IMG/VR virus record: IMGVR_UViG_3300017917_001996
Span: 1 to 64,000 of that record
Length of the DNA: 64,000 nt
Strand: one strand, 5' to 3'
The first letter of the stretch is position 1, and each line of letters starts with the position of its first letter. Under the pieces are notes generated by a model. It did no database searches. It saw only the letters and a program-made list of their open reading frames with translations, and was not told where the DNA came from. Position numbers and translations under genes: made by a program. Of this stretch, positions 44,556 through 53,327 are shown one piece after another.

Positions 44556-47500
44556 ATGTTTGTATTTGATTTATTTAATAAAAAAGTTTCTGAAGCCGAG
44601 CGACGTCCTGAGCCTGAACAAGAAATCATTGATGCCACACGTCGTGCCAGACAACAACAAGAACGCGAACCAGCTGGCAGTGAAAAGATTGACGCAATGT
44701 TGGCGCAACAACATGCACAGCGCCAGGAATACGAAAGAACTGGTAATTTCTGGCTAAAGACCAAAGTTGAACAACGTCATATCCAAGGTCCTTTTGTAGG
44801 CAAGGCTGCTGCTAATACTGCGGCTTTGGAATTATTAAAACAGGCGCCAGAGCTAAAAGGAAACCTATTAATTACTGCCTACGGCCCAGGAGAACAGCAA
44901 AATGAAAATATCGACGAAGGCAGTTTAGTTGCCTTTGAAAAAGATCCTTTTGAGCGTTGGAAAAAAACTGTAGCTATGGTCAATCCTAACATAGGAAAAA
45001 ATTTGACTTTCGTTTCTAAAGAGAATGGAAGAAAAGTTGTTGCTATGGATCGTTTTTCAAGAATTGTCTACGGCGAATTTAATACTCAAACCATGAAGGG
45101 TCAAGTCTTTGATGTTACCGACGGCGACCTAGCCGAGGAAAAAGTTCGCTTAGATCCTAGCTGCTGGAAGAACAAAAAGATCGGCAATCCCAAGACCAAG
45201 ATGAAGGGCGGTGTTAGGGTTAATAATTGTGTGCCTGCAGAAAGTGTAACAGAAGGTTTTGACAATTATCTAGATAACGCTATATACGATCTAGGTATGA
45301 GCAAACCAGGTATGGATCAAGAAACTTTCCTTGACGATCTTTATTCCTACTTAGATGCTGAATATGGTAAAAATGTAGCAGATCGAGTATTCTATCGCGA
45401 AGACGAAAATGAATATGCTGAGTGGTACGACAAATATCAAAGTCTAGATGAAGGTGTAGCGGAAGGATTGGGCAAAGACCTAAAGCGTTTGGCTACAGGA
45501 AAAGATGTAAAAAGTCGTTCTGGACAGGAGATTGCTAAAGCACAGCAAGCCAGTATGACAGGTGATAACAAAACCGCACACAAGCACTTCAAGCGTTATG
45601 ACAAGTTAGACAAGTTGGCAAATAAAGAGCAAGGTGTGGCTGAAGGCTATCCTAAACATCAAGACCTAAGTGCTATACCTACAGAAAAATTGATGGCATT
45701 TCTTGAAAAACATGCAGGTGGAGGTGTCCCAACATTTGGTCAAGGGGCACAAGTTCGCCGTGTTTATGCAGAACTAAAGCGTAGACAGCAAGGTGTGGCG
45801 GAAGGTGGCTATCAAGATGATAGTAAAGAGAGTGAAGAAAATTTAAGATACGCCCGCACTCGCAATCCTGTTGCCGATGTGATTCGCAAGAAATTAAATC
45901 CTAATCAGAAACCAGAAAAAGAGCAAGGTGTGGCGGAAGGCTTGAGCAAGCGTGACCAACAGGATGTGGCTGCTATCCGTGCTGCTATTGCGAGATTAGA
46001 GGCACAACTAAATCACCCTAATGCTGATCGTGATGCTATCCTGCAAAGTATTGCCCACGAGAAGAAGCGTCTAGCATTGTACGGACAGGATGTGGTGGAA
46101 GGCTCTGATCCCTTTACAGATGGATACAATGCTTGGCAGCAGTACCTAAATGGTAAAACAAATCGTCGCCCTACAAATCCTTACCCAGCCGGACATGGTA
46201 TGGGTCAATGGGAAGCAGGAGCGGCCAAGGCTGCCGAAGGACACGACTTTGGCCAAGATGATAGTAGGTATGATGTGGCTGAAGACCAAATCAACGAATC
46301 TCCTACTATTGATTTCATCAGAGGGTTGATCTCTGAATTCAATAAACAAATGAGCGGTAGCCCATACTATCCAATGGATTATAAAAATCCCGGCATGAGA
46401 ATGTGGACTCGCGGTGATGGATCTAAATATAAAGATCCTGGATATATTTTTATTGACCGTGATTTGAAGCCAGAAGATATACCCAAGTGGCAAAAAGCAG
46501 GTGCAGTGGAAAAGTTTTGGAAGTTCTTAGAGTCCAAAGGTGCTCGTAAGATAGGTGATGTTTCTGGCGAGTTTGGCTCAGACCCACACAGTCCTGCTAT
46601 AGTATTGAACAAGTTGATTTTTGTATTCAACGGTCGTAGCATTGCCTGGGGGTCAACCAGCAGACTAAAGAACTCCAATGTGTGGCGTCAGAAACAGCAA
46701 GGTGTGGCGGAAGCAGGCGTGAAACAATTGCCTACTCAAGGTGCAGATTATAGCAAATACGATACTGACCATTTGAAAATGATGTTGCGACCAGGTATCT
46801 TACATCGCAATGAAGCAAGATTCAAATCACTAATTCGTAAAGAATTACAGAAGCGTGAACAGCAAAGTCAACAAGGTGTGGCGGAAGTCTCGGAACAAAA
46901 ATATGTCGTTACTATTGACGCCATCGACCATGGCGTATTAGGAGCAATAACGGTTACTGCTAGTAGCCCAGAAGAAGCAAAAAGAAAAGTTGTTGCTGGT
47001 GTTAAGTCATCAATGTTAAAGCGCGGATATGAATTGATGGTACGCAGTGTGAGTGTAAAACCAGTGGAAGATGTAGCGGAAGAAGACAAAAGTCAAGTAG
47101 AAAAACTAAGAATGCAAGATTATTTAGATCGTGCTGATCGTTTACACGACGAAATAATGACCCTACAACGCTCCGGAAATCTTGAGGCACTAAAGCATTT
47201 AAAACAACAATATTATGAACTAGAAGCACAAGCAAGAAAGGGATTAGTTCCAGAAGAATCTGTTACTGAAGCAGGTACCCCAGCAGATCAACCACGTATT
47301 CGTAAGTATTCTAAGATACGTGCAGATGGATCCAAAGCCGAACGATACGAAGTACTTGACTACCAAGGTCGTCGAGTTGCCGGTCAAGGATCAGAAGGCT
47401 TTGACGATCTCAAAAATGCCAAAGAGTTCTTCAGAAGAAACTACAGTCGTTTAATTAACCCAATCGACGAGGAAGTCTTAAAGACTAAAGAAAAGAAAAA

Positions 47501-47615
47501 AGAACGAGATGATCCTGCACATCCTGGTAAGAAGATGTTAGAGTCTAAGAAGCGTTATTGGTGTTCAACCGAGAAACGTTGGAAAGAGATGGAAGAAAAC
47601 AAGGAGAGCAACTGA
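44556..47615 (+). CDS. Modular polyprotein with QGVAE(G) linkers (probable processed internal head protein)
   Basis: Nine xxVxE-type linkers (mostly QGVAE) separate unrelated 45-143 aa modules. Confidence 0.8.
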   Translation: MFVFDLFNKKVSEAERRPEPEQEIIDATRRARQQQEREPAGSEKIDAMLAQQHAQRQEYERTGNFWLKTKVEQRHIQGPFVGKAAANTAALELLKQAPELKGNLLITAYGPGEQQNENIDEGSLVAFEKDPFERWKKTVAMVNPNIGKNLTFVSKENGRKVVAMDRFSRIVYGEFNTQTMKGQVFDVTDGDLAEEKVRLDPSCWKNKKIGNPKTKMKGGVRVNNCVPAESVTEGFDNYLDNAIYDLGMSKPGMDQETFLDDLYSYLDAEYGKNVADRVFYREDENEYAEWYDKYQSLDEGVAEGLGKDLKRLATGKDVKSRSGQEIAKAQQASMTGDNKTAHKHFKRYDKLDKLANKEQGVAEGYPKHQDLSAIPTEKLMAFLEKHAGGGVPTFGQGAQVRRVYAELKRRQQGVAEGGYQDDSKESEENLRYARTRNPVADVIRKKLNPNQKPEKEQGVAEGLSKRDQQDVAAIRAAIARLEAQLNHPNADRDAILQSIAHEKKRLALYGQDVVEGSDPFTDGYNAWQQYLNGKTNRRPTNPYPAGHGMGQWEAGAAKAAEGHDFGQDDSRYDVAEDQINESPTIDFIRGLISEFNKQMSGSPYYPMDYKNPGMRMWTRGDGSKYKDPGYIFIDRDLKPEDIPKWQKAGAVEKFWKFLESKGARKIGDVSGEFGSDPHSPAIVLNKLIFVFNGRSIAWGSTSRLKNSNVWRQKQQGVAEAGVKQLPTQGADYSKYDTDHLKMMLRPGILHRNEARFKSLIRKELQKREQQSQQGVAEVSEQKYVVTIDAIDHGVLGAITVTASSPEEAKRKVVAGVKSSMLKRGYELMVRSVSVKPVEDVAEEDKSQVEKLRMQDYLDRADRLHDEIMTLQRSGNLEALKHLKQQYYELEAQARKGLVPEESVTEAGTPADQPRIRKYSKIRADGSKAERYEVLDYQGRRVAGQGSEGFDDLKNAKEFFRRNYSRLINPIDEEVLKTKEKKKERDDPAHPGKKMLESKKRYWCSTEKRWKEMEENKESN
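45450..47083 (+). repeat. Dispersed in-frame 16-17 bp repeat CAAGGTGTGGCGGAAG
   Basis: Exact at 45789, 45924, 46698 and 46872; variants at 45450, 45630, 46086, 46269 and 47067. Confidence 0.9.
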
Positions 47616-48049
47616 TGGAAGAATTACAAAAGGCAGCAAAGATTGCCTTTGCCAGCGAATTTAGTTTTTATTTAAAGGCACATCAGTTTCACTGGAATGT
47701 TGAAGGCATCAACTTCAAACAACTGCACGACTTGTTTGGCGGCATCTACGAAGAAGTATATGATAGCATTGACGACTTTGCTGAAAAGATTCGTAGCCTT
47801 GGTACCTACATGCCGGGCAGCTACACTCGTTTTAGTATGCTAAGTAAAATAGAAGACGAAACTAATATCCTTGACAGTCAAGGTATGTTAGCTGAGTTAG
47901 CCGGCGACAACGAAAAAATGATCAAAATTTTTAAAATGGTTTTTGACCTGAGCGAAGCTGCTGGCGAACACGGTTTTAGCGATTTCGTTGCTGGCCGCAT
48001 GGATGCACATCGCAAACATGGTTGGATGTTAAAAGCTAGTTTAAAATGA
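47615..48049 (+). CDS. dps: Dps / ferritin-like DNA protection protein
   Basis: KAHQFHWNVEG..F..LH...DDFAEKIR...KHGWML; TGATG coupling at 47615. Confidence 0.92.
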   Translation: MEELQKAAKIAFASEFSFYLKAHQFHWNVEGINFKQLHDLFGGIYEEVYDSIDDFAEKIRSLGTYMPGSYTRFSMLSKIEDETNILDSQGMLAELAGDNEKMIKIFKMVFDLSEAAGEHGFSDFVAGRMDAHRKHGWMLKASLK

Positions 48050-48441
48050 GAGCTAAAGAGTTTTTATACGAAGGTCGCGAGCATTACCCGCAGGTTCATG
48101 CTGCAATTAGGGACTTACTTCCTATCGCAATGGAGGAACTAGGCCTTAAAGATCTTCCTAAGATTAAAATTGAAAAATCTTTAAACTTTAGCGGGCAACC
48201 TAGCTTTGGTGCTTACACAGGCGCAGATATTCAACTAGGTATTAACGGACGTCATCCAGTAGATGTATGCCGCACTCTTGCACATGAACTAGTCCACTAC
48301 AAACAAAAACTCGATGATAAACTAAACGCAGAATCCGGTACAACTGGTAGCCCAGAAGAAAACGAAGCCAACAGCGTTGCCGGTGTTATCATGCGTAAAT
48401 TTAGCAAACAATTTCCACGTTACATAAACAATGAGAGTTAA
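48046..48441 (+). CDS. Zn metallopeptidase-like protein (HExxH)
   Basis: RTLAHELVHYKQ...ENEAN. Confidence 0.75.
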   Translation: MRAKEFLYEGREHYPQVHAAIRDLLPIAMEELGLKDLPKIKIEKSLNFSGQPSFGAYTGADIQLGINGRHPVDVCRTLAHELVHYKQKLDDKLNAESGTTGSPEENEANSVAGVIMRKFSKQFPRYINNES

Positions 48442-49126
48442 AGATTTTAAAAATGAAATCGCCTACCATAGCCAGCTTAACTCTAAAGCCTGGGCAGGTA
48501 CTCAGCTACGCCCAGAAGTTAGATACAAACTTCTACAAGCTGCAAAATTGTTTATAAGTTATCTTGATATCAAAGGTTTTCGTGTTTTGGATGTAGTGTT
48601 AGCTGGAAGTATGGCTAATTACAATTATACTGACTATTCCGATTTTGATGTTCACGTTGTTACTAGATACGCAGACTTACAGTGCGACGACTTAGCCGAA
48701 GCATTCTATCGTGCTAAGAAACAGTTATGGAACGAACAACACGATATAGTTATACGTGGGCACGAAGTAGAACTGTATGTAGAAGATGTTGAGCAACCTC
48801 CGGTTAGTGCAGGTGTTTACAGTATTCTAGATGACAAGTGGTTAACAGAACCCAAATACAATCCACCAGAAATTAACCGTCCTGCAATTAAGCTAAAGGT
48901 ACAGGACTTAATTAAACAAATCAACGACACATTATCAACTGCCGACGATCCCGCAGACATTCGTCGCATTGCTGATAAAATCGGCGACATGAGAAAATCT
49001 GGATTAGCCCGCGGCGGCGAATTCAGTGTAGAAAACTTAGCATTCAAGGTTCTAAGGAACCAAGGATATATCGATCGTTTGTACAAAGAGTTCAATCGTC
49101 AACAAGACATTGACCTTAGTATCTAA
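48431..49126 (+). CDS. Pol-beta-like nucleotidyltransferase
   Basis: LAGSMANYNYTDYSDFDVHVV (GS...DxD), VELYVE. Confidence 0.8.
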   Translation: MRVKDFKNEIAYHSQLNSKAWAGTQLRPEVRYKLLQAAKLFISYLDIKGFRVLDVVLAGSMANYNYTDYSDFDVHVVTRYADLQCDDLAEAFYRAKKQLWNEQHDIVIRGHEVELYVEDVEQPPVSAGVYSILDDKWLTEPKYNPPEINRPAIKLKVQDLIKQINDTLSTADDPADIRRIADKIGDMRKSGLARGGEFSVENLAFKVLRNQGYIDRLYKEFNRQQDIDLSI

Positions 49127-49313: not shown

Positions 49314-49952
49314 GTGAACGATTTAGTCCTTACTACAAACACACTCGATTCTGAAGGTTATTGGACCAAACCAATTGATAAGATAACCTTTATGCCTATT
49401 CCTGCCGATGTAGCTTTGTTTGATCAAAACGGTTATGATCTAACTGACCTTGAACAACACTATGCCAATGCCAATCTTACTCCGGCCGATTTTCATAGAT
49501 ATCGTCGATCTTTAAAAAAGAGTTGGTTTACACAAGCAGAAAAGAATTGCTATGATGTTTTAAACCATAGTCTGATATTTGAGCGCAAAGGATATGCAGG
49601 TGCAGCTCGAGAGCAATTATTAAAATGGGCCAAGACAAACCCAATGGTCCACAAACTATTAGCCTTACGACCAAAATGGGGTTTAGACTTTAGTATCGAT
49701 TGGGTTGATCCAGACGGAAATGCTTTCGAAATATTTCATTGGGAATACGACGGTTTTGACTACGATGAAATACAAGTTAGAAAATTACAGGTGCAGGCCA
49801 AAATTGCAACCACTGACTGGCACCATGCAGGGCAGCAAATGTTGCAGCACAAAGATCAATGGCACCATTTAGAATTTTTCGAACAGAGTGCTTGGAAGTG
49901 TAAATACTTTGGAATACCGAACGAGCGATTCAAAATGGTCGCTTGGGAATGA
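49314..49952 (+). CDS. Phage hypothetical protein
   Basis: Long ORF; FDQNGYDL, PKWGLDFSID. Confidence 0.7.
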   Translation: MNDLVLTTNTLDSEGYWTKPIDKITFMPIPADVALFDQNGYDLTDLEQHYANANLTPADFHRYRRSLKKSWFTQAEKNCYDVLNHSLIFERKGYAGAAREQLLKWAKTNPMVHKLLALRPKWGLDFSIDWVDPDGNAFEIFHWEYDGFDYDEIQVRKLQVQAKIATTDWHHAGQQMLQHKDQWHHLEFFEQSAWKCKYFGIPNERFKMVAWE

Positions 49953-50055
49953 ACCCCACCTTAGGGCCGTTTGTCGCTACGGAAAAAGGCGTCAAAACAG
50001 GCGGCTGCTGCCTGGGGTCCAGTATTACGCCAGATACTGCTCAAAGTGAGCATTT
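49953..50055 (+). ncRNA. Candidate structured non-coding RNA
   Basis: GC-rich intergenic stretch with four potential hairpins and a possible GGCGT/ACGCC pseudoknot; strand assumed. Confidence 0.45.
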
Positions 50056-50072
50056 CCTCTCAACCTAAACTG

Positions 50073-50101
50073 TTGCATTATTATTGCACAGTGTCTATAA
50101 T
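50073..50101 (+). promoter_or_regulatory. Sigma70-like promoter for the replication operon
   Basis: TTGCAT-N17-TATAAT. Confidence 0.7.
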
Positions 50102-50125: not shown

Positions 50126-50386
50126 ATGAGCTCACGCACATTCAACGGCGATGCAAAAATCAAACTTACACAACTTATCAACGAAGGCATGCAGGTCATG
50201 AACGAAATTGATACTCTTAGCGAAGGACTTAACGATACAGTTAAAGCAGTAGCCGAAGAACTAGAAATTAAACCAGGTATTCTGAAGAAAGCAATTAAAA
50301 TTGCACACAAAGCTAAACTCGGCGAAACTAACCGAGACCACGAAGACCTTAACACTATTCTGGAAACTGTAGGTAAGACCCTTTGA
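50126..50386 (+). CDS. dsDNA-binding protein (T4 DsbA/GapR-like)
   Basis: AGGAG RBS; LNDTVKAVAEELEIKPGILKKAIKIAHK. Confidence 0.65.
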   Translation: MSSRTFNGDAKIKLTQLINEGMQVMNEIDTLSEGLNDTVKAVAEELEIKPGILKKAIKIAHKAKLGETNRDHEDLNTILETVGKTL

Positions 50387-50673
50387 CTAATTTAATTAAA
50401 AATACATTTTCTTGGATTAAGGATGACTGGGCATCTCACCGTTTACGTTTTATTGTTGAGTTGCTTGCCTGGGGCATTAGTATCGGCTGTAGTATCACTA
50501 TGGCTCTCACGGTTCCTAATCCACCCCTACTTGCGCTTTATCCTATCTGGATCGCTGGGTGTGCTATGTATGCTTGGGCTGCTTGGACTAGGAAGTCTTT
50601 TGGCATGCTGGCTAACTACATCTTGCTCACCACCATCGACAGTATTGGGCTAATAAGGATGTTAATTAATTGA
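50383..50673 (+). CDS. Small multi-TM membrane protein
   Basis: Three hydrophobic segments. Confidence 0.65.
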   Translation: MTNLIKNTFSWIKDDWASHRLRFIVELLAWGISIGCSITMALTVPNPPLLALYPIWIAGCAMYAWAAWTRKSFGMLANYILLTTIDSIGLIRMLIN

Positions 50674-53327
50674 GTTACGTTGACGCATTATTTTCCAAAG
50701 ACGAAGACCGCATCTACGTAGTCGAACGTGTAGATGGAAAGAGACTCTACAAGGAGTTTCCGGCCAATTATATTTTTTATTACGATGATCCTCGCGGTAA
50801 ATTCCGTACTATTTACGACACACCAGTTAGTAGATTCAGTACTCGCAGTGGCAAGGAATTTTTTAAAGAACTAAAAATGCACCCAAAAAACAAAGTTTGG
50901 GAAAGTGACGTTAAGCCATTGGTGCGATGCCTAGAAGAAAACTATCTAGGCAAAGATGCCCCAAAGCTAAACGTAGCATTTTTCGATATTGAGGTCGACT
51001 TTGATCCTGTACGTGGATTTAGTCGACCTGAAGATCCTTTTAACCCTGTCACTGCTATCAGTATCTACCTCGATTGGTTAGATAAACTAATTACCTTGGT
51101 GATTGCACCTAAGAGTTATAGTCGAGAATCTGCACAGGAGATTGTTAATAAATTCGACGACTGTTATTTGTTTGATACAGAACAAGATATGATTAACACA
51201 TTCTTGGAACTGATCGACGATGCAGATATCTTAAGCGGTTGGAACTCAGAAGGTTTCGATATTCCGTATATGGTTATGCGGACCACACAGATTCTAAGTA
51301 AAGACGACACACGTCGTTATTGTTTGTGGAATCAATTTCCTAAGAAGCGCACATTCGAACGATTCGGTGCAGAGAACATTACATTCGACCTAATCGGTCG
51401 TGTGCACATGGACTATATGCAACTGTATCGCAAGTACACTTATGAAGAACGTCACAGCTATAGTCTAGACGCCATTGGCGAATATGAACTAGACGAACGC
51501 AAGACGCAGTATGAAGGTACACTAGATCAGCTATACAACAAAGACTTTCCTAAGTTTATTGAATATAACAGACAGGATACTTTGCTGTTAGCCAAGCTAG
51601 ATAAGAAGTTAAGATTCATTGACCTAGCCAACGAACTGGCACATGATAACACTGTGCTGTTGCCCACTGTTATGGGTGCTGTGGCTGTTACCGAGCAGGC
51701 AATTATCAATGAAGCGCATCAAAGAGGTTTAGTTGTTCAAAATAGGAGTAGTTCAGATGACCAAGACACGCAAGCGGCAGGTGCCTACGTTGCTTATCCC
51801 AAAAGAGGCATGCACGAATACATCGGAGCAATTGACATCAACTCGCTCTATCCCTCGGCTATTCGTGCCCTTAACATGGCACCAGAAACAATCGTCGGAC
51901 AACTCAGACCAACGCTCACTGACCACTACATAAATGAAAAGATGGCCAATGGCTCCAGCTTTGCTGATGCCTGGGAAAACATGTTTGGCAGTTTAGAATA
52001 TACTGCTGTTATGAACATGGAGCCAGGCACCGAATTAACTGTAGACTGGGAAGGCGGTGGGTCAGATACAATGAGTGCCAAAGACATTTGGCATTTAATC
52101 TTTGAAGGGAACCAACCTTGGATTCTTAGTGCCAATGGTACTATTTTTAAATATGATGCTAAAGGTGTAGTACCAGGATTATTGGAGCGTTGGTATGCAG
52201 AACGTAAAGAACTTCAGGCTAAAAAGAAAGATGCTACAACTGCTGAAGAAAAGGCCTTTTGGGACAAGCGACAGTTGGTTAAGAAAATTAACCTTAATTC
52301 ACTGTATGGCGCTATTCTTAATCCTGGATGTCGTTTTTTTGATAAGCGTATTGGTCAAAGTACAACCTTAACAGGTCGTGTTATTGCACGTCATATGGAT
52401 GCATTTGTTAATGAATGCATTACAGGCGTTTATGATCACGTTGGTGAAGCTGTTATCTATGGCGACACTGACTCTGTTTATTTCAGTGCATGGCCTGCTG
52501 TTAAAGATGATGTCGAAGCTGGGCGTATGCCTTGGAACAAAGACATTTGCGTACAACTTTACGATCAGATTGCTGAACAGGTAAACGATAGCTTTCCTGC
52601 GTTTATGGAACGTGCATTTCGTTGTCCAAGACCAATGGGCAGTCTTATCAAAGGTGGTCGTGAATTGGTTGCAGAGAAAGGCCTGTTCATTAAGAAAAAG
52701 CGTTATGCTGTATTGATTTACGATCTAGAAGGTAATCGTCTAGACAAAGATGGCAAGCCAGGCAAGGTCAAGGCTATGGGTCTAGATCTTAAAAGGAGTG
52801 ATACACCTAAGGTTGTGCAAGACTTCTTAAGTGACTTGCTCTTAAAGGTACTCACTGGTTCGCCCAAAGAAGTTGTCTATGAGCAGGTTAAAGAATTTAA
52901 GATCTTATTCCAAGATCGACCTGCTTGGGAGAAAGGCACACCTAAGCGTGTTAACAATTTGACTAAGTTTAGTGAAGCCGAAGCGAGGCAAGGTCGTGCT
53001 AACATGCCAGGTCATGTTCGAGCAGCTATCAATTGGAATACATTGAAGCGTATGCACAGTGACAACTATAGCATGGCTATTGTAGACGGTATGAAAACGG
53101 TTGTGTGTAAACTCAAGCCTAATCCACTAGGCTTTACCAGCGTGGGTTATCCTACAGACGAAACACACATACCAGACTGGTTCAAGGAATTGCCATTCGA
53201 CGACGGCTTAATGGAAACAACTATTGTAGACCAGAAAGTCGAAAACCTATTAGGTGTGCTAGACTGGAATATCAGCGAGCACACTGAAACTAAAAACACA
53301 TTCAATGACTTGTTTAGCTTTGATTAA
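50670..53327 (+). CDS. Family B DNA polymerase (T4 gp43-like)
   Basis: Exonuclease FDIEV and WNSEGFD; polymerase DINSLYPS, KINLNSLYG, YGDTDS, KKRY. Confidence 0.97.
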   Translation: MSYVDALFSKDEDRIYVVERVDGKRLYKEFPANYIFYYDDPRGKFRTIYDTPVSRFSTRSGKEFFKELKMHPKNKVWESDVKPLVRCLEENYLGKDAPKLNVAFFDIEVDFDPVRGFSRPEDPFNPVTAISIYLDWLDKLITLVIAPKSYSRESAQEIVNKFDDCYLFDTEQDMINTFLELIDDADILSGWNSEGFDIPYMVMRTTQILSKDDTRRYCLWNQFPKKRTFERFGAENITFDLIGRVHMDYMQLYRKYTYEERHSYSLDAIGEYELDERKTQYEGTLDQLYNKDFPKFIEYNRQDTLLLAKLDKKLRFIDLANELAHDNTVLLPTVMGAVAVTEQAIINEAHQRGLVVQNRSSSDDQDTQAAGAYVAYPKRGMHEYIGAIDINSLYPSAIRALNMAPETIVGQLRPTLTDHYINEKMANGSSFADAWENMFGSLEYTAVMNMEPGTELTVDWEGGGSDTMSAKDIWHLIFEGNQPWILSANGTIFKYDAKGVVPGLLERWYAERKELQAKKKDATTAEEKAFWDKRQLVKKINLNSLYGAILNPGCRFFDKRIGQSTTLTGRVIARHMDAFVNECITGVYDHVGEAVIYGDTDSVYFSAWPAVKDDVEAGRMPWNKDICVQLYDQIAEQVNDSFPAFMERAFRCPRPMGSLIKGGRELVAEKGLFIKKKRYAVLIYDLEGNRLDKDGKPGKVKAMGLDLKRSDTPKVVQDFLSDLLLKVLTGSPKEVVYEQVKEFKILFQDRPAWEKGTPKRVNNLTKFSEAEARQGRANMPGHVRAAINWNTLKRMHSDNYSMAIVDGMKTVVCKLKPNPLGFTSVGYPTDETHIPDWFKELPFDDGLMETTIVDQKVENLLGVLDWNISEHTETKNTFNDLFSFD

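What the first reader, a model, noticed from the sequence alone, without database searches (positions are those of the whole stretch)
49953..50055. Compact multi-stem intergenic RNA with a possible pseudoknot before the replication operon
Seen: a GC-rich island of about 100 nt with stems CCGT/ACGG (49967/49979), CAGGCGG/CTGCCTG (49998/50008), CAGTAT/ATACTG (50020/50034) and TGCTCA/TGAGCA (50038/50047). Long-range pairings ACCCCA/TGGGGT and GGCGT (49988) with loop ACGCC (50027) are also possible. It is not a simple terminator or a tRNA. Inference: an sRNA, ribozyme or replication-associated RNA.
Basis: partly seen in the sequence, partly recalled or inferred. Interest (0 to 1): 0.6.

Follow-up and report, generated by a model that had tools for sequence, protein, structure and literature searches.

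The report
Pseudoknotted jumbo-phage RNA complementary to 23S rRNA
The GC-rich island is this phage's single copy of an undescribed, strongly conserved, pseudoknotted RNA found in over 200 related giant-phage contigs, and its exposed loops are exact complements of a universally conserved stretch of the host's large ribosomal RNA, so it may be a natural antisense RNA aimed at the ribosome.

Summary
Window 49953-50052 (+) is a real structured element, one copy in a 250-kb T4-like jumbo-phage record. It lies between the stop codon of a 212-aa ORF and the promoter of a dsbA-like / 96-aa / PolB operon.

Relatives occur in over 200 IMG/VR contigs, usually one per genome (two in one complete genome). 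Rfam 15 and ARAGORN find nothing.

Covariation supports:
- hairpin P1;
- hairpin P2;
- hairpin P3;
- a pseudoknot between the P2 loop and the 3' tail.

The nearly invariant P1 loop, CCUUAGGACCG, is the exact reverse complement of 23S rRNA 1920-1930; flanking bases extend the match to 15 nt in some members. The P3 loop exists in four versions. Three match one or the other strand of helix 70 over 8-9 nt; the fourth matches 7 of 8.

Best explanation (about 0.4): a phage RNA that base-pairs with host 23S rRNA domain IV. Expression, pairing and effect are all untested. Rivals are a cis 3'-end or insulator element, a protein- or ligand-binding RNA, and a ribozyme.

That it is a new structured RNA family: about 0.95.

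The parts
49953..50052 (+). The whole element, from the first base after the upstream stop codon to the end of the conserved tail GUGAGCA
   Evidence: Covariance model R1 hits 49946-50059 (+) at 29.8 bits, E 5e-6; it is the only hit in the 250-kb record
49959..49969 (+). P1-loop block CCUUAGGGCCG. The family consensus is CCUUAGGACCG; the window has A to G at the seventh base of the block, which would pair as a G-U wobble with U1923
   Evidence: Block 89-100% conserved per position in 99 elements. Consensus is the exact reverse complement of E. coli 23S 1920-1930
49967..49982 (+).
   Evidence: Read from the sequence. Relatives have a hairpin of variable length and sequence at this place
49988..49993 (+). 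J1/2 segment GGCGUC. In subtype relatives (L091, L104) the wider segment AAUGGCGU is a sense copy of 23S 1969-76; the window itself shares only GGCGU with 23S 1972-76
   Evidence: Present unchanged in all 8 members of the window's subtype, so there is no covariation to test it. Sense matches AATGGCGT and GAATGGCGT listed
49998..50014 (+). P2 hairpin: stem CAGGC / GCCUG, 7-nt loop GGCUGCU (50003-50009)
   Evidence: Four pairs anchored on the loop are 98-100% paired; pairs 2-4 covary, e.g. CG 76 / GC 46
50020..50039 (+). P3 hairpin: stem CAGUAU / AUACUG, loop UACGCCAG (50026-33), loop type c
   Evidence: P3 outer stem 81-83% paired and inner stem 99% paired, all pairs with double changes. UUACGCCA is the reverse complement of 23S 1971-78
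50045..50051 (+). 3' tail AGU-G-AGC, pseudoknot partner of the P2 loop: U50009-A50045, C50008-G50046, G50007.U50047, G50048 bulged, U50006-A50049, C50005-G50050, G50004-C50051
   Evidence: Loop and tail change together in relatives, e.g. GGGUGCU with AGUGACC, GACUGCU with AGUGAGU, GCCCCCA with UGGGGG, GCCUACA with UGUAGG. Formal count: 88% paired, 3 pairs with double changes
50038..50059 (+). Alternative local hairpin UGCUCA-AAG-UGAGCA followed by UUUCCUCU. It looks like a terminator and competes with the pseudoknot and with the last P3 pairs. Found only in the window's subtype
   Evidence: Flagged by the terminator scan. TTTT follows the tail in 34 of 99 relatives
50073..50101 (+). Sigma-70-like promoter of the next operon: TTGCAT, 17 nt, TATAAT (context, not part of the RNA)
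   Evidence: Read by eye. The same layout (TTGC.., about 17 nt, TATAAT) is seen in relatives. The consensus scan did not list it because the first hexamer matches only 3 of 6
50126..53327 (+). Downstream operon (context): DsbA-like dsDNA-binding protein (50126-50386), 96-aa hydrophobic protein (50383-50673), family B DNA polymerase (50670-53327)
   Evidence: Pfam and PHROG hits. tblastn to phage records annotated 'DsbA double-stranded DNA binding' and 'DNA binding protein'
49314..49952 (+). Upstream 212-aa ORF, whose stop codon abuts the element (context)
   Evidence: ORF list. No family hit. The upstream gene differs between relatives: 49 clusters among 95

Best explanation
The island is the window's copy of an undescribed family of pseudoknotted RNA elements, about 80-120 nt long. 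A clade of uncultivated T4-like jumbo phages usually carries it once per genome. It is transcribed on the gene strand as the 3' untranslated or intercistronic part of whatever gene lies upstream, usually just ahead of the dsbA-like/PolB operon. The fold has three hairpins. P1 presents a nearly invariant 11-nt single-stranded block, CCUUAGGACCG. P2 has a 7-nt loop that pairs with the 3' tail (AGU-G-AGC) to close a pseudoknot. P3 has an apical loop that comes in four alternative versions. The P1 block is the exact complement of 23S rRNA 1920-1930, that is the 3' strand of helix 69 and the junction after it. The P3 loop versions are complementary to one or the other strand of the neighbouring helix 70 (1929-37, or 1964-78). 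I therefore propose that the pseudoknot scaffold presents two antisense loops that base-pair with host 23S rRNA domain IV. The likely target is nascent or unassembled 23S, or free 50S subunits, where this bridge B2a/B3 region is exposed. The effect would be to interfere with, or sense, 50S maturation or subunit joining. SHOWN: existence, near single copy, conservation, helices and pseudoknot by covariation, absence from Rfam, and the complementarity with its statistics. INFERRED: that the + strand is the RNA, that it pairs with 23S in the cell, and any effect on ribosomes.
For: Family and structure:
- Model R1 finds exactly one hit in each of 99 non-redundant loci (948 kb) and one in the window's own 250-kb record. 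It finds one hit in four other large records and two in a complete 352-kb genome.
- P2, P3 and the pseudoknot covary: covariation score 0.727 against 0.206 and 0.557 against 0.193, 0 of 500 shuffles; slid controls 0.04-0.17.
- P1 has fully compensated variants such as ACUCG/CGAGU and CUUCAC/GUGAAG.

Strand:
- G-U exceeds A-C in helices, 66:20 and 67:33.
- The element is co-oriented with its flanking genes: 86 of 95 upstream, 84 of 93 downstream.
- There is no conserved promoter of its own.

rRNA link:
- The longest exact antisense match to E. coli rRNA is 11-15 nt in 92 of 99 elements, and in 73 of the 99 elements the longest match lies in 23S 1917-1933.
- The sense orientation and shuffled sequences give 8-10 nt.
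- P3 loop type a matches 1929-37 over 9 nt. Type d matches 1968-76 over 9 nt. Type c matches 1971-78 over 8 nt. Type b matches 1964-71 in 7 of 8 positions (and by inspection).
- 1933-35 pairs with 1974-76 and 1938-41 with 1968-71 in the rRNA fold, so all P3 versions aim at helix 70.
- Common P1-block variants are transitions that keep a wobble: A to G opposite U1923 or U1926, C to U opposite G1929.
- The 18-mer target is exact in E. coli and in all 36 genomes with a hit among 81 sampled in one phylum.
- No complementary target exists elsewhere in the phage record.
- Synthetic antisense PNA against helix 69 inhibits E. coli growth (PMC7038079).
Against:
- The P2 loop is also a 9-11-nt complement of the 16S 530 loop, but that match is not kept in variants, whereas the pseudoknot is. 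A long rRNA match can therefore arise here without being the selected property.
- Some P1-block variants would break the pairing: CCCUAGG (C opposite A1928), GGAACG (A opposite G1922), GGUCC (U opposite U1923).
- In long forms part of the block is inside the P1 stem.
- The P1 and P3a targets overlap at G1929-G1930.
- In the window's subtype the P3 loop can pair in cis with J1/2.
- In mature 50S the target is largely base-paired.
- The hosts are unknown.
- One RNA gene would have to act against tens of thousands of ribosomes.
- The second copy in G001 lacks the P1 block, and L022/L023 lack it too.
Confidence: 0.4

Rival explanations
1. A cis-acting 3'-end or insulator element of the upstream transcript. 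It would be a structured terminator, attenuator, processing site or exonuclease block that separates the variable upstream genes from the next promoter. The rRNA complementarity would be incidental or an ancestral relic.
For: It always lies between a stop codon (7-16 nt before the P1 block) and the next promoter or gene start. TTTT follows the tail in 34 of 99. The window has a terminator-like hairpin at 50038-52 that competes with the pseudoknot, which would suit a switch. There is no promoter of its own.
Against: It usually occurs once per 250-350-kb genome although these genomes have hundreds of gene ends. Two thirds of members lack a U-run. A terminator does not need an invariant 11-nt loop or alternative loops that all match one rRNA helix. 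The chance of the joint 23S matches is of the order of 1e-8 by my own estimate.
Confidence: 0.25
2. A protein- or ligand-binding RNA, such as an RNP scaffold, a decoy or a riboswitch-like sensor. The conserved P1 loop would be a recognition site for a phage or host factor rather than for rRNA.
For: Pseudoknotted three-helix architecture with one nearly invariant single-stranded block. Tight synteny with a DsbA-like nucleic-acid-binding protein gene.
Against: The downstream and upstream genes are heterogeneous: 45 and 49 clusters. In a quarter of loci a promoter lies between the element and the dsbA-like gene. The discrete switching of the P3 loop between sequences that all complement helix 70 is not expected for a protein or ligand site. 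No partner could be tested here.
Confidence: 0.17
3. A new class of self-cleaving ribozyme that processes the polycistronic transcript, or a trans-cleaving one that uses the loops as guide arms against 23S.
For: Compact pseudoknotted fold in an intercistronic position. Pistol and other small ribozymes have a similar layout of a hairpin loop paired with a 3' strand (my own knowledge). The antisense loops could act as substrate-binding arms.
Against: No match to any Rfam ribozyme, even at E of 10 or less. No hammerhead core. The pseudoknot and junction sequences vary freely, which leaves few invariant candidate catalytic nucleotides outside the P1 loop.
Confidence: 0.08
4. A DNA-level element, such as a replication origin or single-strand initiation signal next to the polymerase operon, or an rRNA mimic made from the minus strand.
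For: Near single copy and next to PolB in most loci. Folding energies of P1 and P3 alone do not distinguish the strands. On the minus strand the loops would be sense copies of 23S segments.
Against: G-U pairs outnumber A-C by 2-3 to 1 on the + strand, and the invariant G.U in the pseudoknot becomes A-U in variants. All flanking genes are on the + strand and there is no room or conservation for a minus-strand promoter. Relatives have the PolB operon without the element, and the intact copy can sit elsewhere.
Confidence: 0.05

Closest known systems
Plasmid and phage antisense RNAs that act through kissing hairpin loops (ColE1 RNA I, R1 CopA; my own knowledge)
   Same: Short structured RNA that presents the antisense sequence in hairpin loops. 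The loops contain YUNR-like turns: CUUA in P1 and UUCG in P3 type a.
   Different: The presumed target is ribosomal RNA, not an mRNA or a primer. There are two loops on a pseudoknot scaffold. The element is not encoded opposite its target.
Archaeal and eukaryotic guide RNAs (C/D box, H/ACA) for rRNA modification, some of which target the helix 69 region (PMC7075261 and PMC4644070, titles and abstracts listed)
   Same: 10-15-nt complementarity to universally conserved rRNA, with two guide segments per RNA.
   Different: No C, D or ACA boxes (0 of 99 elements). No pseudouridylation pocket. Bacteria lack the partner proteins.
TURBS termination-reinitiation signals of caliciviruses and influenza B (PMC3035654, abstract listed)
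   Same: An mRNA element at a stop codon between two genes.
   Different: From my own knowledge, TURBS lies upstream of the stop/start overlap and pairs with 18S rRNA. Here the element follows the stop codon and matches 23S. The next gene often has its own promoter.
Synthetic antisense PNA oligomers against 23S helix 69, the peptidyl transferase centre or the sarcin loop (PMC7038079)
   Same: Strand invasion of a conserved functional 23S region. This shows that such pairing can inhibit translation and growth.
   Different: Those are man-made, unstructured oligomers. No natural counterpart turned up in the searches made here.
Small pseudoknotted ribozymes and riboswitches, such as pistol or preQ1-III (my own knowledge)
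   Same: A hairpin loop pairs with a downstream strand to form a pseudoknot, and a further hairpin lies inside the pseudoknot.
   Different: No Rfam match. The conserved nucleotides sit in an exposed loop rather than in junctions.
Promoter-early stem-loop (PeSL) cassettes of T4-type phages (my own knowledge)
   Same: A structured intergenic element directly upstream of an early-type promoter, in a variable region of a T4-like genome.
   Different: PeSLs are repeated many times per genome and are simple stem-loops. This element usually occurs once per genome and has three covarying helices and a pseudoknot.

Membership tests
The new family itself (P1 / P2 with pseudoknot / P3 element of jumbo phages) | Match to the covariance model built from relatives | tested here: met
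   29.8 bits, E 5e-6 in the own genome; full-length match to model positions 1-88. It is one of the lowest scores of the 99, so the window is a divergent member.
The new family itself | P1-loop block CCUUAGGACCG | tested here: met
   Window has CCUUAGGGCCG at 49959-69, 10 of 11 positions. The same A to G change occurs in other lineages: L115, L121, L125, L157.
The new family itself | P2 hairpin with a 7-nt loop complementary to the 3' tail (pseudoknot) | tested here: met
   Canonical loop GGCUGCU (50003-09) and canonical tail AGUGAGC (50045-51). Covariation shown in relatives.
Any Rfam 15 family | Score at or above the family's gathering threshold | tested here: not met
   No hit in the window. 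None at E of 10 or less around the element. None at E of 1 or less in 12 related loci. In L088 only chance hits of 12 bits against thresholds of 46 and 76.
tRNA / tmRNA | Cloverleaf or tmRNA recognised by ARAGORN; 3' CCA | tested here: not met
   No gene in the 64-kb window. CCA near the 3' end in 1 of 99 elements.
Intrinsic (Rho-independent) terminator | GC-rich hairpin directly followed by a U-tract | tested here: inconclusive
   The window has a 6-bp hairpin at 50038-52 followed by UUUCCUCU. Only 34 of 99 relatives have TTTT after the tail, and the local hairpin is limited to the subtype.
C/D box or H/ACA guide RNA | C box RUGAUGA with D box CUGA; or an ACA box 3' of a hairpin with a pocket | tested here: not met
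   C box in 0 of 99. C and D together in 0 of 99. ACA near the 3' end in 2 of 99.
Hammerhead and other known self-cleaving ribozymes | Conserved catalytic core; Rfam model match | tested here: not met
   CUGANGA...GAAA in 0 of 99. No Rfam match. Cleavage itself cannot be tested with these tools.
Trans-acting antisense RNA | Complementarity to the target located in accessible loops | tested here: met
   11-15-nt exact complement of 23S 1917-1933 in the P1 loop. 8-9-nt complement of helix 70 strands in the P3 loop.
Trans-acting antisense RNA | Expression of the RNA and pairing with the target in the cell | not testable with these tools
Repeated intergenic cassettes (PeSL- or REP-like) | Many copies per genome | tested here: not met
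   One copy in 250 kb. One or two copies in five other records of 199-355 kb.
Protein-coding gene | Conserved open reading frame | tested here: not met
   Element length varies from about 77 to 117 nt, with all three residues modulo 3 (44, 31, 24). Changes are compensatory in helices.

The most novel reading that the evidence does not exclude
A phage-encoded natural antisense RNA directed against the host ribosome. A pseudoknot scaffold would present two loops that invade 23S rRNA at the helix 69 / helix 70 junction (bridge B2a/B3 region). This would give giant phages an RNA-based way to block or reprogramme 50S maturation or subunit joining. The discrete alternative P3 loops would be different solutions for opening the same rRNA helix.
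Probability: 0.3. Interest if true: 0.92.

Novelty: categorically new. Interest (0 to 1): 0.8.

Why it matters
If only the structural part holds, this is a new and abundant RNA family. It has over 200 instances and clear covariation including a pseudoknot, it comes from uncultivated giant phages, and it is absent from Rfam. If the rRNA link holds, it would be the first natural RNA of a bacterial virus known to me that targets ribosomal RNA by base-pairing. That would be a new mode of host takeover or sensing. It would also be a natural counterpart of the synthetic antisense oligomers now being developed against helix 69. The idea can be tested directly with a 100-nt transcript and purified ribosomal subunits.

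Tried and rejected
- Rfam at gathering and E-value thresholds, on the window and on 13 related loci: nothing.
- ARAGORN: nothing.
- BLAST of the region against named phages, near and distant modes: nothing.
- Model R1 on Sinorhizobium phage Phosso and Agrobacterium phage Atu_ph07, the closest named PolB relatives at 51% and 46%: no element.
- Model R1 on five further partial relatives: no hit, but these are only 7-36% complete.
- Repeated-element idea: rejected, one or two copies per genome.
- Own-promoter idea: no conserved motif from -60 to -14.
- A target for the P1 loop inside the phage record: none.
- P2 loop as an antisense of the 16S 530 loop (9-11 nt): rejected as the selected property, because loop variants lose it while keeping the pseudoknot with the tail.
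- ACCCCA/TGGGGT long-range helix and the window's minimum-energy fold: not conserved in the nearest relatives.
- Strand assignment from folding energies of P1 and P3: uninformative.
- Whole-molecule duplex folding against rRNA: gave meaningless long duplexes.
- 8-mer match counting: too noisy.
- Automated parsing of P2 loop and tail: noisy, though still above shuffles (3.92 against 3.12, maximum 3.70 of 500).
- The catalogue of over 10,000 unnamed candidate viral RNAs built from IMG/VR (PMC10690425) may already contain this motif. Its supplements are not held, so this could not be checked.
No alternative genetic code was used.

Full report
**Context.**
- The window is the first 64 kb of a 250-kb IMG/VR virus record, estimated 71% complete.
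- Downstream of the finding lie three genes: an 86-aa gene (50126-50386), a 96-aa hydrophobic ORF, and an 885-aa family B DNA polymerase.
- The best named relatives of the polymerase are Sinorhizobium phage Phosso (51%) and Agrobacterium phage Atu_ph07 (46%), followed by Rak2-like jumbo phages.
- The 86-aa protein matches PHROG 'transcriptional regulator' families. In other jumbo phages its relatives are annotated 'DsbA double-stranded DNA binding' or 'DNA binding protein'.
- The finding fills the gap between the stop codon of a 212-aa ORF (49950-52) and a sigma-70-like promoter. I read the promoter by eye: TTGCAT at 50073-78, 17 nt, TATAAT at 50096-101.

**The observation.**
- GC rises to 0.55 in the island, against about 0.40 around it.
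- The single-sequence fold is only mildly unusual on the + strand (z -2.37) and not at all on the - strand (z -0.48).
- There is no tRNA.
- There is no Rfam match at gathering scores or at E of 10 or less.

**Relatives.**
- A PolB-based search of IMG/VR returned 80 loci at 75-90% identity.
- About half of those with enough upstream sequence carry a clearly homologous element ahead of the dsbA-like gene.
About 120 of the sequences are distinct true elements.
- A covariance model, R1, was built from 30 short members. It finds exactly one hit in each of 99 non-redundant loci, 948 kb in all.
- R1 finds one hit in the window's whole 250-kb record. It finds one hit in four other records of 199-355 kb and two in a complete 352-kb genome.
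- So this is a gene-like element that usually occurs once per genome, not a generic repeat or terminator.
- R1 finds nothing in Phosso or Atu_ph07.
- Two matches lie in bacterial MAGs labelled Lishizhenia and Haliscomenobacter. They are probably mis-binned phage contigs.

**Structure.**
- P2 is a 4-bp stem around a 7-nt loop. Anchored on the loop, pairs 2-4 are 98-100% paired and switch freely: CG 76 / GC 46; GC 70 / CG 51; GC 74 / AU 24 / CG 13 / GU 8.
- On the model-based alignment of 99 sequences, 85% of cells are paired against 55% in shuffles. The covariation score is 0.727 against 0.206 (0 of 500 shuffles), and slid controls give 0.04-0.10. P2 is 98% paired, the P3 outer stem 83% and the P3 inner stem 99%.
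- P1 shifts in register between members, so the model aligns it poorly (63%). A direct search finds a stem of 5.2 bp on average, against 4.5 with shuffled partners (maximum 4.76 in 200 shuffles). There are fully compensated versions such as ACUCG/CGAGU, CUUCAC/GUGAAG and UCAUCCU/AGGAUGG.
- When the second scan freed the P2 loop and the tail, the two were seen to change together:

| P2 loop | 3' tail |
|---|---|
| GGCUGCU | AGU-G-AGC |
| GGGUGCU | AGUGACC |
| GACUGCU | AGUGAGU |
| GGCUACU | AGUAGC or AGUGGC |
| GACUACU | AGUAGU |
| GGCCACU | AGUGUGGC |
| GCCUACA | UGUAGG |
| GCCCCCA | UGGGGG |
| GUUCCCC | GGGGAC |

- On a 46-sequence alignment with the pseudoknot written in, that helix is 88% paired and has three pairs with double changes. 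The whole structure beats all 500 shuffles.
- The element is therefore P1, then P2, then P3, then a tail, with the P2 loop pairing to the tail.
- In the window this gives:
  - P1 block 49959-69;
  - P1a 49967-82;
  - P2 49998-50014;
  - P3 50020-39;
  - tail 50045-51.

**Strand and expression.**
- Folding energies of P1 and P3 alone do not separate the strands.
- In the consensus helices, G-U outnumbers A-C by 66:20 and 67:33. The constant G.U of the pseudoknot becomes A-U in variants.
- The element is co-oriented with its neighbours: 86 of 95 upstream ORFs and 84 of 93 downstream ORFs.
- In 72 of 98 loci the dsbA-like gene lies downstream on the same strand, at distances from 48 nt to about 4.8 kb. 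PolB is also seen in 70 of them.
- No conserved promoter lies upstream of the element. The stop codon of the upstream gene sits 7-16 nt before the P1 block. TTTT follows the tail in 34 of 99.
- The upstream and downstream genes are otherwise heterogeneous.
- The RNA is thus most likely made as the 3' end or intercistronic part of an mRNA.

**The rRNA link.**
- I fetched an E. coli rrn operon and compared it with the conserved single-stranded blocks.
- CCUUAGGACCG is the exact reverse complement of 23S 1920-1930.
- P3 loop type a (GAUUCGCUACC) complements 1929-37 over 9 nt.
- Type d (ACGCCAUUC) complements 1968-76 over 9 nt.
- Type c, the window's own (UUACGCCA), complements 1971-78 over 8 nt.
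- Type b (AGUCGUGC) pairs with 1964-71 in 7 of 8 positions, by inspection.
- The longest exact antisense match to rRNA is 11-15 nt in 92 of 99 elements, and in 73 of the 99 the longest match lies in 23S 1917-1933. The sense orientation and shuffled elements give 8-10 nt.
- In the rRNA fold, 1933-35 pairs with 1974-76 and 1938-41 with 1968-71. All four P3 versions therefore aim at one helix, H70, from either side, next to the P1 target at the foot of H69.
- The 18-mer target is exact in E. coli and in every one of the 36 genomes with a hit among 81 sampled in one phylum.
- My rough estimate for the joint occurrence of an 11-mer and two independent 9-mers within 60 nt, all antisense, is of the order of 1e-8.
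- There is a caution. The P2 loop plus its closing pair also complements the 16S 530 loop over 9-11 nt, but loop variants drop that match while keeping the pseudoknot. That match is best treated as coincidence.
- Some P1-block variants keep a wobble with 23S (A to G opposite U1923 or U1926; C to U opposite G1929). Others would break a pair.

**The window's own copy.**
- It is a divergent member, scoring 29.8 bits. Its P1 block has the A to G change, which splits the exact 23S match, so its longest exact antisense match is the 10-nt match of P2 to 16S.
- It has the type c P3 loop and an extra segment between P1 and P2.
- In subtype relatives that extra segment (AAUGGCGUC) is a sense-like copy of 23S 1969-76. 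In the window it reads AAGGCGUC. In both, its GGCGU pairs with the P3 loop.
- It is invariant in the 8 members of the subtype, so it can be neither confirmed nor rejected by covariation.

**Interpretation.**
- That this is a new, conserved, pseudoknotted RNA family I hold at about 0.95.
- That its conserved loops act by pairing with host 23S rRNA I hold at about 0.4. The form of the 23S could be nascent or unassembled rRNA, or free 50S. The expected effects are on 50S maturation or subunit joining.
- Synthetic antisense PNA against helix 69 does inhibit E. coli (PMC7038079).
- Searches of the paper library found no natural precedent.
- The element is dispensable for the PolB operon as such. 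Relatives have the operon without it. In one complete genome the intact copy is elsewhere, while a copy without the P1 block sits upstream of the dsbA-like gene. This argues against an obligatory cis-regulator of replication genes.
- Rivals are a cis 3'-end or insulator element (0.25), a protein- or ligand-binding RNA (0.17), a ribozyme (0.08), and a DNA-level or minus-strand element (0.05).

**Limits.**
- There are no expression data, no host and no biochemistry.
- E. coli rRNA stands in for the unknown host.
- The motif may already be an unnamed entry in the catalogue of PMC10690425, which I could not check.

Noticed in passing
window 50003-50011 (P2 loop with its closing pair): CGGCUGCUG is a 9-nt reverse complement of the 16S rRNA 530 loop (519-527). 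Stem bases extend this to 10-11 nt in many relatives. Loop variants lose the match while keeping the pseudoknot, so it looks coincidental.
   Followed up: yes
L208 1090-1201 (-) and L209 4105-4206 (-): The element occurs in contigs of two MAGs labelled uncultured Lishizhenia sp. and Haliscomenobacter sp. (Bacteroidota). These are either mis-binned phage contigs or a hint at the host group.
   Followed up: partly
G001 (352-kb complete relative): L210 1039-1124 and L211 972-1072: This genome has two copies. The copy about 500 nt upstream of the dsbA-like gene lacks the P1 block (39 bits). The intact copy (73 bits) lies about 190 kb away.
   Followed up: partly
Relatives, just 3' of the element (e.g. 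L083, L088, L092, L163, L174, L175, L201): A recurrent ATAAATAC motif lies 8-15 nt before the next ATG, often with no Shine-Dalgarno sequence. It resembles the T4 late promoter TATAAATA. Other loci have TTGC.., 17 nt, TATAAT instead.
   Followed up: no
L215 (about 4148 on the minus strand) and L022/L023 578-666: These are reduced versions of the element. L215 appears to lack P2, and its P3 runs straight into a U-run. L022 and L023 lack the P1 block.
   Followed up: no
window 44556-47615 (+): A 1019-aa ORF with no Pfam or PHROG match. The 131-aa ORF (48046-48441) and the 212-aa ORF (49314-49952) also have no family hit. The 231-aa ORF (48431-49126) matches only phrog_36119, of unknown function.
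   Followed up: no
Long forms of the element in relatives (e.g. L005, L024, L086): The P1a hairpin carries a recurrent GUUAC. This is the complement of GUAAC in the helix 69 loop of 23S, so P1 plus P1a may derive from, or pair with, all of 23S 1906-1933. Because hairpins are near-palindromic, sense and antisense cannot be told apart here.
   Followed up: partly
Type b P3 hairpins in relatives (e.g. L024, L028, L035): A conserved 3' bulge, CCGGAAU, complements 23S 1938-42 (AUUCC), while the loop complements 1964-69. Together they would bracket the base of helix 71.
   Followed up: no
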